The position numbers were made by a program, and so were the translations under genes. DNA of 64,000 bases, taken from positions 7,378,001 through 7,442,000 of the forward strand of contig NW_026889796.1 in NCBI RefSeq assembly GCF_033153115.1. The letters run 5' to 3'. The notes beneath the pieces are model-generated. The model was given only the letters and a program-made list of their open reading frames with translations, was not told where the DNA came from and did no database searches. Below are positions 1,680-43,859 of the stretch, one piece after another. The stretch's first letter is position 1; each line of letters opens with the position of its first letter. This DNA is from Saccostrea echinata (Eukaryota).

Positions 1680-1924
1680 CTGAGAAATGTCCATCCAGTA
1701 CATATTAAATTCATCCTTCTCTAAGGCGCTATCTTGTCCTGCATGACTAAACTTGTTTCTGTAAATCCGGATTCTTTCTAAATCGTCTGTTTCCTTTTTA
1801 TCTCCAATCTCTGGCTTTTTCCCCCAACCTTTGGTTGGTTTAGGCAAATCTTCAACATAGTTCCTAAGCAGTTTGTACATTATCGATACATCAAACTTTG
1901 AAGATAATGGACAACTTCCGTCAC
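1680..1924 (-). CDS. Exon: catalytic half of DZIP3-like HEPN domain
   Basis: catttaag|GT acceptor, CAG|gtaaat donor; (G)DGSCPLSSKFDVSIMYKLLRNYVEDLPKPTKGWGKKPEIGDKKETDDLERIRIYRNKFSH...YWMDISQ matches the FD.S..Y.LLRN / P..GWG / D.ERIR..RN...H pattern. Confidence 0.9.
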
Positions 1925-43800: not shown

Positions 43801-43859
43801 AAGCAAAGTATCCTTATTGATGTCATAAGTTACTCCAACAAGCTTTAGTTTTTGGATTT
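1680..43859 (-). CDS. Multi-exon Roco-family gene: unassigned N-terminal region + Roc GTPase + COR + DZIP3-like HEPN (5' and 3' incomplete)
   Basis: 11 exons with GT..AG junctions, matching phases (1,1,1,1,1,0,0,0,1,1) and no stops over ~1108 codons; Roc G1/G3/G4 motifs, COR motifs and HEPN RxxxxH in the correct order. Confidence 0.85.
2822..3058 (-). CDS. Exon: N-terminal half of DZIP3-like HEPN domain
   Basis: tatgcag|AT acceptor, weak CCAG|gttgtt donor, phase 1-1; NWRVIEKLIAISRDALKVYFDSKLSPQDLEKTL...QLLIMFP. Confidence 0.85.
4456..4528 (-). CDS. Exon: acidic linker
   Basis: ttccag|CAA...ATCG|gtaagt; QRGDDLENERLYEMQEQDENQVVI; phase 0-1 is exactly what is needed to link COR to HEPN. Confidence 0.7.
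7322..7393 (-). CDS. Exon: 72-nt symmetric linker exon
   Basis: cattttag|AGG...AATCAG|gtaagg; RKERTRWIMSREGTNPTGGDFSNQ; phase 0-0. Confidence 0.55.
7500..8741 (-). CDS. Exon: end of Roc + COR domain (414 codons)
   Basis: gattcag|ACA acceptor, TGG|gtaagt donor; HWGEFIPSFWLSVE, LQFFHDIGHILFF, ILDVQWFVDAFKSI, YIPC, FFQRVVVTC are typical COR motifs. Confidence 0.92.
10400..11430 (-). mobile_element. Degenerate non-LTR retrotransposon (CR1/L2-like) 3' fragment
   Basis: GVPQETVLGP, WLMRFNLDKC, LVRPALEYA, LEAVQRRAARF, TRGH motifs with stops and frameshifts. Confidence 0.8.
13150..14110 (-). mobile_element. Degenerate Penelope-like RT C-terminal fragment plus 3' region
   Basis: LEFLIDNIY, QQSVGISM, RYIDD, YDKRDDFNF, SNIP...YISQLIRY motifs; a short related piece lies at ~48570-48630. 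Confidence 0.75.
15546..15693. other. N gap (others: 33703-33842, 48382-48536, 53262-53411, 60567-60727, 62639-62769)
   Basis: Runs of N. Confidence 0.99.
15701..15789 (-). CDS. Exon: Roc G4 region
   Basis: ttttacag|AT...TAT|gtaagt; DYISFWLQSIRTYCGENMPVVLVATHKDKY (Roc-type THxD). Confidence 0.9.
18253..18560 (+). mobile_element. Non-autonomous Helentron/HINE-like element fragment
   Basis: Starts attaaggacttccgtcttcacggaaaaccttat (short palindrome), followed by a (ttc)/(tta) microsatellite. Confidence 0.45.
20200..21372 (+). pseudogene. Harbinger accessory MADF/Myb-SANT DNA-binding gene remnant
   Basis: ELVEWLKNHPTFYNKG...LWQEKAQQM; WYKCMSTTYGKL; C-terminal RTAWANWMGTMFPYIHDDLWEQY. Confidence 0.65.
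21869..22980 (-). pseudogene. Harbinger (DDE_Tnp_4 / HARBI1-like) transposase remnant
   Basis: KLAIILRYLASGGSYKSLMYGFRV, LGALDGKHIAIK, YYNYKRFHSLIL, DADYKFIRVDVGANGSASD, VGDDA, RRIVENAFGILANRW; frameshifted. Confidence 0.88.
23909..23969. repeat. GC-rich hairpin (palindromic MITE core)
   Basis: gtttagagaaagcattccctccgagggcc-gaa-ggccctcggaggggatgttttctctaaac. Confidence 0.85.
24468..24686 (-). CDS. Exon: Roc G3 region
   Basis: tttttcacag|AA...GGAG|gtgagg; [34 protein letters not shown]. Confidence 0.92.
24930..25145 (+). mobile_element. 5'-truncated tRNA-SINE copy
   Basis: Reverse complement of the SINE body at 41810; (CAAA)n tail. Confidence 0.8.
25226..26788. repeat. Foldback: ~309-bp near-identical inverted arms around degenerate tandem units
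   Basis: Arms 25226-25534 and 26481-26788; the ORF track shows near-identical peptides on opposite strands. Confidence 0.9.
27771..28705 (+). mobile_element. pogo/Tigger-type deletion derivative
   Basis: TA flanks; TIRs CAGTAGATTTCTTTTATAACGTA and TACGTTATAAAAGATGTTTACTG; residual transposase tail KQTNITDFL. Confidence 0.8.
29060..29705 (+). repeat. Interspersed repeat homologous to 55470-56130
   Basis: Collinear similarity, e.g. gaaaatgcgtacaatagctaaa, tagtctatgcccttgcactttt, gcgtcaagtcaa. Confidence 0.85.
30577..30727. repeat. ~150-bp palindromic MITE-like hairpin
   Basis: ttcagtgaacatggctttatgaatagcaa...ttgctattcataaagccatgttcactgaa. Confidence 0.88.
30971..31225 (-). CDS. Exon: Roc P-loop and switch I
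   Basis: cttttatgag|TG acceptor (rare GAG), ATGG|gtaaat donor; RARIIVVGCAGAGKTTLVERLK...TTTTVGLDVH. Confidence 0.9.
31330..31712. mobile_element. MITE with imperfect TIRs
   Basis: aaaaaaatatgcgtgtttccggta ... taccggaaacacacacatattttttt. Confidence 0.6.
33105..33400 (-). repeat. Degenerate ~33-bp minisatellite, inverted relative to 38735-39740
   Basis: Repeated ggtaccagattatgaagctacctacc-like units. Confidence 0.75.
33945..34300 (+). mobile_element. Helentron/HINE-like 5' ends with degenerate satellite units
   Basis: aacaagaggctcatgggccaca start; body resembles the 39825-41010 units. Confidence 0.45.
35463..35622. repeat. ~160-bp palindromic MITE-like hairpin
   Basis: gtcgcagctgttgcagaaaaaatacattacccgc-gtaa-gcgggttatgtatttttttctgcaatagctgcgac. 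Confidence 0.88.
37346..37591 (-). mobile_element. tRNA-derived SINE (internally deleted), inserted in decayed satellite-bearing repeat 36540-37730
   Basis: 13-bp TSD gcctttcatttga (37333-37345 / 37592-37604); B box on the minus strand. Confidence 0.85.
38735..39740 (+). repeat. ~33-bp minisatellite
   Basis: Consensus near ctggtacctgttacaggtaggtagcttcataat, many diverged copies. Confidence 0.9.
39825..41010 (+). repeat. ~165-180-bp satellite-like array typical of bivalve Helentron/Helitron-N elements (Cg170-like, inference)
   Basis: Recurrent aagattttcaaagaaataatgcattttcacta...gggtcatgaaattcacaatttt units; decayed inverse copies at ~50930-51600. Confidence 0.75.
41808..42108 (-). mobile_element. 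Full-length tRNA-derived SINE
   Basis: Minus-strand A box TGGCGCAGTGG and B box GGTTCGAATCC; (CAAA)n tail. Confidence 0.9.
42258..42564 (-). mobile_element. tRNA-derived SINE, tandem duplicate of 41808-42108
   Basis: Near-identical copy at a 454-bp offset that also includes ~150 bp of flank. Confidence 0.9.
42773..43021 (-). CDS. Exon: region immediately before Roc (absent from the ORF track)
   Basis: ctttttcag|AT...TTAT|gtgagt; DAFDQRSCTDFECFVYYALLTNLPTSEIVLKYFATSGYVEKKEETCIIVPAEYNERVIQKMDVDIIAHKTFQDVDIHEAVIRL; phase 1-1, joins in frame to (L)RIPKEVLEW. Confidence 0.8.
43123..43593 (-). CDS. Exon: unassigned helical N-terminal region
   Basis: tttgtag|GG...GATG|gtatta; open for 157 codons (NICDPDRNSRLVLILKC...GNPWMTD); 101-nt intron to the next exon; the 5' boundary is uncertain. 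Confidence 0.7.
43686..43859 (-). CDS. Exon: unassigned N-terminal region
   Basis: cttaatcag|AA...CAAA|gtaagt; EIQKLKLVGVTYDINKDTLLEETQTTDFFSIWESKSEKEKPCIVLLTEMSS; phase 1-1 with a 92-nt intron. Confidence 0.6.

What the first reader, a model, noticed from the sequence alone, without database searches (positions are those of the whole stretch)
1680..43859. Roco GTPase with a C-terminal HEPN RNase-like effector: candidate GTP-switched innate-immunity or cell-death nuclease
Seen: phase-consistent exons encode Roc (GCAGAGKTT at 31089-31115, DFAGQ, THKD), then COR, an acidic linker and a DZIP3-like HEPN domain with intact RNKFSH (1743-1760). Established: Roc-COR modules dimerise in a nucleotide-dependent way, and LRRK-type Rocos carry a kinase after COR. 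HEPN RNases (RNase L/Ire1 KEN, Cas13, Csm6) build their active site from two RxxxxH motifs and so depend on dimerisation. Inference: COR dimerisation could switch the HEPN nuclease on, giving an animal sensor-switch-effector protein that parallels bacterial NTPase-HEPN abortive-infection systems. I know of no characterised Roc-COR-HEPN protein, but cannot exclude unannotated homologues.
Basis: partly seen in the sequence, partly recalled or inferred. Interest (0 to 1): 0.88.

Follow-up and report, generated by a model that had tools for sequence, protein, structure and literature searches.

The report
Oyster Roco GTPase carrying HEPN domain
This oyster gene really does join a LRRK2-type GTPase switch (Roc-COR) to a predicted RNA-cutting HEPN domain; it belongs to a large bivalve gene family that swaps HEPN, Death, DED or protease modules into the same end position, which looks like innate immunity, but nothing about its activity or expression has been tested.

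Summary
Thirteen minus-strand exons, all GT-AG and in frame, form a 1,225-codon reading frame: unassigned N-terminal region, Roc, COR, disordered linker, DZIP3-type HEPN. The gene overruns the finding at both ends. Exon 1 lies at 46892-46625, and the last HEPN exon lies 3.4 kb beyond the window's left edge. Both assembly gaps are intronic.

The genome is the Saccostrea echinata assembly. I found no annotated protein for this locus. Uncharacterised RefSeq/GenBank models with the same Roc-COR-HEPN order exist in S. cucullata (many), S. echinata, Sinanodonta and Potamilus; Ostrea edulis yields only a COR-HEPN fragment. R and N of the RNxxxH motif are invariant in 23 of them.

On a COR tree, close paralogues carry HEPN, Death, DED or a trypsin-like peptidase after COR, so this position is an exchangeable effector slot. 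The same layout is described for bacterial Roc-COR conflict systems. NACHT-HEPN_DZIP3 proteins are already known in bivalves and cnidarians.

GTP-gated RNase activity and an immune role remain inference. I rate it a new variant of a known kind. Another note in this scan (s1-803036) reports a B-box-Roc-COR-HEPN gene elsewhere in this genome.

The parts
46625..46892 (-). Exon 1 (outside the finding's range). ATG at 46892-46890 follows an in-frame TAG. An alternative AG acceptor at 46855/46854 is not excluded. Weak Ig-like C-terminal half.
   Evidence: tblastn of P0002 residues 2-71 and P0156 residues 61-145. Junction to 43859. Sequence. No Pfam hit.
43710..43859 (-). Exon 2, N-terminal region with no assigned domain.
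   Evidence: Collinear with P0002 79-127. GT-AG and in frame.
43123..43593 (-). Exon 3, N-terminal region with no assigned domain.
   Evidence: 55-58% identity to P0002/P0156. No Pfam hit and no Atlas hit.
42773..43021 (-). Exon 4, N-terminal region ending just before Roc.
   Evidence: 64-67% identity to P0002/P0156. Junction 42773>31225.
30971..31225 (-). Exon 5, Roc G1 P-loop (GCAGAGKTT at 31115-31089) and switch I.
   Evidence: Pfam Roc/Arf hits. 71-86% identity to P0002/P0031.
24468..24686 (-). Exon 6, Roc G3 (DFAGQ) and switch II.
   Evidence: Pfam Roc E 5.7e-6. Junctions.
15701..15789 (-). Exon 7, Roc G4 (THKD). Its GTAAGTA donor sits 7 nt before assembly gap 15546-15693.
7500..8741 (-). 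Exon 8, end of Roc plus COR-A and COR-B (414 codons).
   Evidence: Pfam COR-A E 1e-9. 333 homologues at E<=0.001. The AF2 model of a 94%-identical paralogue matches C. tepidum Roco COR, LRRK1 and LRRK2.
7322..7393 (-). Exon 9, linker micro-exon (24 codons), fast-evolving.
   Evidence: Matches P0001 307-330. 7 non-synonymous and 0 synonymous differences from copy A. Disordered in the AF2 model.
4456..4528 (-). Exon 10, acidic linker micro-exon (73 nt).
   Evidence: Matches P0001 330-354.
2822..3058 (-). Exon 11, first HEPN helices.
   Evidence: 82% identity to P0001 355-449. Helices 370-418 of the AF2 model, pLDDT above 90.
1680..1924 (-). Exon 12, HEPN core with ERIRIYRNKFSH (RNKFSH at 1760-1743).
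   Evidence: Pfam HEPN_DZIP3 E 2.9e-16. Motif conservation.
1..1 (-). Placeholder for exon 13, which lies outside the window at L001:6583-6479 (G000:C47:7374479-7374583, window -3417 to -3521). It encodes the last HEPN helix, a 35-codon tail and the stop.
   Evidence: 97% identity to the P0001 tail. Stop codon. Junction 1680>-3417.

Best explanation
The locus is an intact 13-exon, roughly 50-kb gene of the oyster Saccostrea echinata. It encodes a ~1,225-residue Roco protein in this order: an N-terminal ~370 residues with no recognised domain, a Roc GTPase with canonical G1/G3/G4 motifs, COR-A/COR-B, a ~60-residue disordered charged linker, and a C-terminal DZIP3-type HEPN domain with an intact RNxxxH motif.

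It belongs to a lineage-expanded bivalve Roco family. In that family the position after COR is an exchangeable slot filled by HEPN, Death, DED or a trypsin-like peptidase.

Most likely mechanism (inferred, not shown): the Roc-COR module acts as a nucleotide-dependent conformational and dimerisation switch. That switch brings together or releases the two tethered HEPN domains of a dimer, forming a composite RxxxxH RNase site. The result would be RNA cleavage as an innate-immune or cell-death output. In this reading the paralogues with Death or DED in the slot would signal through adaptor assemblies instead.

Shown here: gene structure, domain identities, motif conservation, purifying selection, family expansion and effector swapping. 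Inferred: RNase activity, GTP control and the immune role.
For: Gene structure:
- Domains hit exon by exon.
- All 12 junctions are GT-AG and in frame.
- Exon lengths sum to 3,678 nt (1,225 codons plus stop) from the ATG at 46892 to the stop at L001:6478-6476.
- The window is collinear with the full-length Roc-COR-HEPN model P0002 (1,236 aa) and with P0156, P0017 and P0005.

Domain identities:
- A family profile hits LRRK2 Roc-COR at E 1e-31.
- The COR fold matches 3dpu, 6hlu, LRRK1 and LRRK2.
- HEPN models have pLDDT 89-93. The best fold match is the Csm6 HEPN domain (Z 8.7), followed by Swt1, other Csm6 and HepS.

Conservation and selection:
- R and N of the motif, and the preceding ERI, are invariant in 23-24 proteins. 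The H sits at x4 or x5.
- dN/dS is 0.42 against paralogue A and 0.24 against copy B.
- Against copy B, exons are 99.5-100% identical and introns 96-97.6%.

Family context:
- The genome holds at least 150 HEPN_DZIP3 hits and at least 80 COR hits.
- Sister paralogues differ only in the post-COR module: P0160 HEPN / P0030 Death, P0005 HEPN / P0006 DED, P0090 HEPN / P0129 Death, and P0071 trypsin-like.
- Literature gives two parallels: bacterial AP-GTPase-COR-effector systems (PMC8195603) and NACHT-HEPN_DZIP3 proteins (PMC9646362, PMC8260672).
Against: - No transcript evidence for this locus.
- No annotated protein for this locus turned up in the protein collection.
- RefSeq splits the closest paralogue (copy A) into a Roc model (P0031) and a COR-HEPN model (P0001).
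- To my knowledge no member of the DZIP3 HEPN family has demonstrated RNase activity.
- The HEPN fold match is only moderate for a helical bundle: Z 8.7, and Foldseek found nothing.
- The N-terminal sensor region is unidentified.
- The dimer prediction never ran.
Confidence: 0.6

Rival explanations
1. The HEPN domain does not cleave RNA. It acts as an RNA- or nucleotide-binding sensor, or as an oligomerisation/adaptor module. On this reading the protein is a signalling scaffold like its Death- and DED-bearing paralogues.
For: The same post-COR slot holds non-enzymatic Death and DED adaptors in close paralogues. The name-giving DZIP3/hRUL138 is known as an RNA-binding ubiquitin ligase, not as an RNase (my knowledge). 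No activity data exist.
Against: The R and N of the Rx4-6H motif are invariant across 23-24 Roc-COR-HEPN proteins from oysters to unionid mussels. An enzyme (trypsin-like peptidase, P0071) also occupies the slot. The best structural neighbour is the Csm6 HEPN RNase domain.
Confidence: 0.2
2. This particular copy is not expressed as one full-length mRNA. It could be a silent recent duplicate or haplotig, or it could be transcribed as two units (Roc part and COR-HEPN part), as RefSeq annotates paralogue A.
For: No protein from this locus was returned by the protein searches. Copy A is annotated as two models, P0031 and P0001. A 99.5-100% identical exon set lies 220 kb away on the same contig. 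No RNA data were obtainable.
Against: All 13 exons are open, with canonical splice sites and an unbroken 1,225-codon frame. The RefSeq split in copy A falls inside an uninterrupted 414-codon COR exon with no stop, so it looks like an annotation artefact. dN/dS is 0.24-0.42, and exons are more conserved than introns. S. cucullata relatives are annotated full length.
Confidence: 0.12
3. The protein has a housekeeping Roco role, such as membrane trafficking or RNA processing, and is unrelated to immunity or cell death.
For: Human Rocos (LRRK1/2) act in vesicle trafficking (literature). Some eukaryotic HEPN proteins (Las1, Swt1) process cellular RNA (PMC3710099). Swt1 appears among the fold neighbours.
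Against: The family shows lineage-specific expansion, rapid effector swapping and very recent duplicates. Its partner domains (Death, DED, B-box, NHL, Ig) are typical of immune and apoptotic proteins. There are no 1:1 orthologues outside bivalves among the 150 best representatives whose sources I looked up.
Confidence: 0.06

Closest known systems
NACHT-HEPN_DZIP3 (NLR-like) proteins of bivalves and cnidarians (PMC9646362, PMC8260672, PMC3710099)
   Same: The same Pfam HEPN_DZIP3 domain with Rx4-6H, fused in one polypeptide to an NTPase switch. Large lineage-specific expansions. Proposed antiviral or anti-transposon RNase effector.
   Different: Here the switch is a Roc-COR GTPase, not a STAND ATPase. 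No NACHT domain is detected (only a P-loop-level hit, E 0.022). HEPN is C-terminal after COR, not N-terminal.
Bacterial LRR-AP-GTPase(Roc)-COR-variable-effector conflict systems (Kaur et al. 2021, PMC8195603)
   Same: A Roc-COR core followed by a slot that different paralogues fill with different effectors, including trypsin-like peptidase. Multiple paralogues per genome.
   Different: This is an animal gene with introns. No LRR was detected N-terminally. HEPN is not named among the bacterial effectors in the paper's text, and no 'COR+HEPN' string occurs in the held supplements. Death and DED are the alternative modules here.
Human Roco proteins LRRK2, LRRK1 and DAPK1
   Same: A Roc-COR tandem. 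The family profile hits LRRK2 residues 1317-1710 at E 1e-31. The G4 motif is of the TH-x-D type, as in LRRK2. The COR fold matches. DAPK1 also ends in a Death domain, like the paralogues here.
   Different: No kinase domain, and no LRR, ankyrin or WD40 repeats detected. An HEPN domain sits where LRRK proteins carry the kinase.
Dimerisation-activated HEPN RNases (Csm6/Csx1, RNase L and Ire1 KEN domains)
   Same: An RxxxxH HEPN motif. The best fold neighbour is S. mutans Csm6 HEPN (Z 8.7, rmsd 3.5 A over 115 residues). The domain is tethered to a regulatory nucleotide-binding module.
   Different: The regulator is a Roc-COR GTPase rather than a CARF or pseudokinase/ankyrin sensor. No sequence-level relation to any solved HEPN. 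Activity and dimer geometry are untested.
Molluscan ROCO fusions to TIR or Death domains (Aplysia immunome, PMC9334734)
   Same: Roc-COR combined with innate-immunity domains in a mollusc.
   Different: Those fusions carry TIR, LRR, Death, EF-hand or Mbt domains. An HEPN fusion is not reported there.

Membership tests
Roco (Roc-COR) GTPases | Ras-like Roc domain with G1 (GxxxxGKT), G3 (DxxGQ) and G4 motifs | tested here: met
   GCAGAGKTT, DFAGQ and THKD are present in exons 5-7. Pfam Roc hits. The motifs match the family consensus.
Roco (Roc-COR) GTPases | COR domain immediately C-terminal to Roc | tested here: met
   Pfam COR-A E 1e-9 on exon 8. Profile hit to LRRK2 Roc-COR at E 1e-31. The AF2 model of a 94%-identical paralogue matches 3dpu, 3dpt, 6hlu, LRRK1 and LRRK2.
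Roco (Roc-COR) GTPases | Roc and COR in one polypeptide | tested here: inconclusive
   The in-frame GT-AG junction 15701>8741 is collinear with the full-length models P0002, P0156, P0005 and P0017. No transcript evidence was obtainable, and RefSeq splits paralogue A.
Roco (Roc-COR) GTPases | GTP binding and hydrolysis | not testable with these tools
   Needs biochemistry.
HEPN_DZIP3 (PF18738) | Profile match above the curated cut-off | tested here: met
   60 bits against a cut-off of 27 for exon 12 alone. 76.7 bits for paralogue P0001.
HEPN_DZIP3 (PF18738) | Rx4-6H motif with a polar residue after R | tested here: met
   RNKFSH at 1760-1743. R and N are invariant in 23-24 relatives.
HEPN superfamily | All-alpha HEPN core fold | tested here: inconclusive
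   The AF2 models are confident and all-helical. The VIA-align top hit is Csm6 HEPN at Z 8.7, with Swt1, Csm6 and HepS at Z 5.7-6.5. Z below 13 is not decisive for helical bundles, and Foldseek found nothing. The model searched was a paralogue's single-exon HEPN (L007), not this gene's.
HEPN superfamily | Metal-independent RNase activity that depends on dimerisation | not testable with these tools
   Complex prediction did not complete. Needs an assay.
LRRK-type Roco kinases | Protein kinase domain after COR | tested here: not met
   No kinase hit in any exon or in P0001, P0002, P0005 or P0017. HEPN occupies that position.
NLR / STAND NACHT-HEPN proteins | NACHT (STAND) NTPase domain | tested here: not met
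   Only a P-loop-level NACHT hit at E 0.022, below the cut-off, on the Roc G1 exon.
Bacterial-type AP-GTPase-COR-effector conflict systems | Variable effector slot after COR among paralogues | tested here: met
   HEPN, Death, DED and Trypsin_2 appear after COR in closely related paralogues. At least 15 label changes are forced on the COR tree.
Bacterial-type AP-GTPase-COR-effector conflict systems | N-terminal leucine-rich repeats as sensor | tested here: not met
   No LRR hit in exons 1-4 or in the P0002 N-terminus. The Atlas gave no lead.

The most novel reading that the evidence does not exclude
Bivalve Roco proteins form a distinct, GTPase-based class of animal intracellular immune switches, parallel to STAND/NLR receptors and directly comparable to bacterial Roc-COR conflict systems. 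On this reading the post-COR slot delivers interchangeable death outputs. This member would be a GTP-state-gated HEPN RNase that shuts down infected cells in an abortive-infection-like way.
Probability: 0.3. Interest if true: 0.8.

Novelty: new variant of a known kind. Interest (0 to 1): 0.55.

Why it matters
Roco proteins are studied almost entirely through LRRK2 and Parkinson's disease, and how Roc-COR controls its output domain is still debated. This is a natural family in which the same Roc-COR core drives an RNase-type domain, death-fold adaptors or a protease.

That gives two things. First, it offers a simple readout (RNA cleavage) for testing how nucleotide state and COR dimerisation control an effector. 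Second, it suggests that animals, like bacteria, use Roc-COR as an immune or cell-death switch alongside NLRs.

For oyster biology, it adds a candidate antiviral effector class to the known NACHT-HEPN expansions.

Tried and rejected
Tools that gave no result:
I could therefore not check whether the 3-kb Logan contig encoding the COR-HEPN protein P0041 is a transcript.
- Complex prediction (HEPN homodimer, P0001 residues 395-550, two copies) was busy on all eight tries. There is no verdict on dimerisation.

Searches that found nothing:
- Foldseek of the HEPN-only model against the PDB gave nothing below E 0.6.
- The family profile against PDB sequences hit only Roc-COR and Rab proteins, with no HEPN structure.
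- The N-terminal region (exons 1-4) had no Pfam hit and no usable Atlas hit. An Ig-like reading of exon 1 rests only on a sub-threshold I-set hit in paralogue P0004.
- Six literature searches found no paper that couples Roc-COR with HEPN.

- I did not send the joined spliced protein to any search or fold tool. Exons were searched by reference, and database paralogues (P0001, P0002) or a single-exon paralogue ORF (L007) served as proxies.
- The assembly gaps were not filled.

Readings rejected:
- LRRK-type kinase Roco: no kinase domain.
- NLR: no NACHT domain.
- Separate Roc and HEPN genes as the default reading: the frame, the splice sites and the full-length homologues argue against it.
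Full report
**Observation.**
- The stop-free segment 1653-1925 contains RNKFSH at 1760-1743 and hits Pfam HEPN_DZIP3 (E 2.9e-16, 60 bits against a cut-off of 27).
- Segment 7494-8762 hits COR-A (E 1e-9).
- Segments 24340-24714 (DFAGQ) and 30825-31226 (GCAGAGKTT at 31115-31089) hit Roc.
- The THKD G4 motif lies in a short exon, 15789-15701.

**Gene model.** A profile-free HMMER search with the COR exon against 1.84 billion representatives gave 333 homologues.
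- The best is P0001 (94% identity), a 550-aa COR-plus-HEPN model.
- P0002 (62% identity) is a 1,236-aa Roc-COR-HEPN_DZIP3 model. P0005 and P0017 have the same order.
- tblastn shows that P0002, P0156, P0005, P0017 and others are collinear with the window, exon by exon, from 46853 down to 1680.
- I enumerated GT/AG pairs around each boundary and scored the local junction peptide against the homologues. This gave one canonical in-frame solution per junction.
- The exons are ?-46625, 43859-43710, 43593-43123, 43021-42773, 31225-30971, 24686-24468, 15789-15701, 8741-7500, 7393-7322, 4528-4456, 3058-2822 and 1924-1680.
- The homologues continue for 23-34 residues after 1680, and nothing in window 1-1679 matches that tail.
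- I fetched the 10 kb to the left of the window (L001). The last exon is at L001:6583-6479, 97% identical to the P0001 tail and followed by a stop.
- At the 5' end an ATG at 46892 follows an in-frame stop.
- From that ATG the exon lengths sum to 3,678 nt, which is 1,225 codons plus the stop.
- I did not send the joined protein to any search or fold tool. All searches used single exons by reference or database paralogues.

**Assembly gaps.** Gap 15546-15693 begins 7 nt after the intact GTAAGTA donor of the THKD exon. Gap 33703-33842 lies between exons 42773 and 31225. P0002 and P0031 align across both introns with no missing residues. Both gaps are therefore intronic, and only the intron lengths are uncertain. 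I did not fill them.

**Organism and copies.**
- The window's contig has the same length (17,055,740) as the contig that carries P0001 and P0031, which NCBI names as Saccostrea echinata proteins.
- P0001 maps at 99% identity to C47:3.467 Mb. The genome is therefore that assembly, and P0001/P0031 come from a paralogue ("copy A", 96-97% nucleotide identity in exons).
- A third copy ("copy B", C47:7.597-7.612 Mb) is 99.5-100% identical in exons and 96-97.6% in introns, with indels. It is either a very recent duplicate or a retained haplotype.
- No protein from the window's own locus was returned by the protein searches.
- RefSeq splits copy A into a Roc model (P0031, named "LRRK2-like") and a COR-HEPN model (P0001). 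The split falls inside a 414-codon COR exon that has no stop, so I read it as an annotation artefact.

**Selection.** Nei-Gojobori dN/dS between the window and copy A is 0.42 overall, 0.39 for COR and 0.22-0.37 for the HEPN exons. Against copy B it is 0.24. The counts are small. Linker micro-exon 9 has 7 non-synonymous and 0 synonymous differences.

**Domain checks.**
- A profile of 23 Roc-COR-HEPN proteins hits LRRK2 Roc-COR at E 1e-31, and also C. tepidum Roco and LRRK1.
- The AF2 model of P0001 (pLDDT 78.6) has a confident COR, a disordered linker (residues 311-366, pLDDT about 30) and a confident all-helical HEPN domain (370-549, pLDDT about 93).
- Foldseek matches the COR part to 3dpu, 3dpt, 6hlu, LRRK1 and LRRK2.
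- For an HEPN-only model I used a single-exon HEPN ORF from another Roc-COR-HEPN locus of this genome (L007). Its pLDDT is 89.
- Foldseek found nothing for that model. The exhaustive VIA-align search ranked S. mutans Csm6 HEPN first (Z 8.7, rmsd 3.5 A, 115 residues). Swt1, two more Csm6 proteins and HepS followed at Z 5.7-6.5.
- This is supportive but not decisive for a helical bundle.

**Conservation of the motif.** In 23-24 aligned Roc-COR-HEPN proteins the ERI, R and N positions are invariant. The histidine follows at x4 (oyster type) or x5 (unionid type and some oyster paralogues).

**Family context.**
- The genome has at least 150 HEPN_DZIP3 matches above cut-off and at least 80 COR matches.
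- Roc-COR-HEPN models occur in S. cucullata (many loci), S. echinata, Sinanodonta woodiana and Potamilus streckersoni. Ostrea edulis contributes only a 397-aa COR-HEPN fragment (P0059), detected with my local HEPN model and not scanned for Roc.
- Variant architectures include B-box-Roc-COR-HEPN, NHL-Roc-COR-HEPN and HEPN-Ig-DED-Roc-COR.
- On a maximum-likelihood tree of 118 COR regions, the window groups with P0001, P0156, P0002 and P0157 (support 100). The C-terminal-HEPN label needs at least 15 changes and is interleaved with other C-termini.
- Pfam scans of the sisters show what those C-termini are: P0160 (HEPN) next to P0030 (Death), P0005 (HEPN) next to P0006 (DED), P0090 (HEPN) next to P0129 (Death), and P0071 with a trypsin-like peptidase.
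- Some of the inferred changes will be gene-model artefacts. The close sister pairs, however, show real module exchange.

**Literature.**
- HEPN_DZIP3 expansions and fusions to NACHT, Death, CARD, TPR, RING, ankyrin and LRR are known (PMC3710099, PMC9646362, PMC8260672, PMC10236652).
- Bacterial LRR-AP-GTPase-COR proteins with at least 24 alternative C-terminal effectors are described (PMC8195603). "COR+HEPN" does not occur in the supplements held for that paper.
- Aplysia ROCO-TIR and ROCO-Death fusions are reported (PMC9334734).
- I found no paper describing Roc-COR-HEPN.
- Another note of this scan (s1-803036) reports a B-box-Roc-COR-HEPN gene elsewhere in this genome. That matches the P0160 architecture I verified in S. 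cucullata.

**Interpretation.** The architecture is real and conserved, and it sits in an effector slot. This supports, by association, an immune or cell-death switch whose output here is an HEPN domain. It remains inference that this domain is an RNase, that Roc-COR gates it, and in which nucleotide state it does so. A bacterial Roco cycles between monomer and dimer during GTP turnover (PMC5714945, abstract), so the sign of the proposed switch cannot be predicted. The ~60-residue disordered linker would let two HEPN domains of a COR-mediated dimer meet, but I could not model this.

**Verdict.** This is a new variant of a known kind, of moderate interest.

Noticed in passing
G000:C47:7597001-7612000 (L002+L003): A second copy of the COR-linker-HEPN exons lies 220 kb from the window on the same contig. 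Exons are 99.5-100% identical and introns 96-97.6%, with 0.5-1.9 kb indels. It is a recent segmental duplicate or a retained haplotype.
   Followed up: partly
G000:C47:3466001-3492000 (L004-L006): In paralogue 'copy A', RefSeq splits the gene into XP_061194745 (Roc, named 'LRRK2-like') and XP_061194554 (COR-HEPN). The boundary falls inside an uninterrupted 414-codon COR exon, so this is probably an annotation artefact.
   Followed up: partly
L007:4654-7555 (G000:C46:4605654-4608555), minus strand: Another Roc-COR-HEPN locus of this genome. Its HEPN domain sits in a single exon and carries an Rx5H motif (RNSLTAH).
   Followed up: partly
P0071 (Saccostrea cucullata; the source was not looked up individually): A Roc-COR protein with a trypsin-like peptidase (PF13365) in the post-COR slot. 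The same effector type is listed for bacterial AP-GTPase-COR systems.
   Followed up: no
P0086 (S. cucullata XP_062595362): A reversed layout: HEPN_DZIP3, then Ig repeats, DED, Roc and COR. It resembles the HEPN-Ig-DED-TRADD-N expansion described for Crassostrea gigas.
   Followed up: no
window 7322-7393 (exon 9): The linker micro-exon differs from copy A by 7 non-synonymous and 0 synonymous changes in 24 codons, while the flanking domains show dN/dS of 0.2-0.4.
   Followed up: no
window 53790-54631, minus strand: A Tc1/mariner-type transposase remnant (DDE_3 E 2.5e-10; HTH_Tnp_Tc3_2 E 3.9e-14) upstream of the gene.
   Followed up: partly
window 56782-57081, minus strand: A weak GIY-YIG hit (E 0.007), next to reverse-transcriptase-looking ORFs at 57261-58388. 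Possibly a Penelope-like element.
   Followed up: no
window 41833-42084, 42287-42589 (+) and 24921-25115, 37300-37566 (-): An interspersed repeat with a similar ~65-100-codon open frame recurs in several introns of the gene. No Pfam hit.
   Followed up: no
P0157 (S. cucullata XP_ partial, 1443 aa): A close relative of the window's protein is annotated with retrotransposon RT/RNase H-type domains (PF17917, PF17919) at its N-terminus. This is probably a chimeric gene model with a transposable element.
   Followed up: no
window 46854-46892: Exon 1 can start at the ATG at 46892, which follows an in-frame stop, or be entered through an AG acceptor at 46855/46854. P0002 starts within this exon, while P0156 has 60 extra N-terminal residues that have no match in the window. 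Whether upstream exons exist is unresolved.
   Followed up: partly
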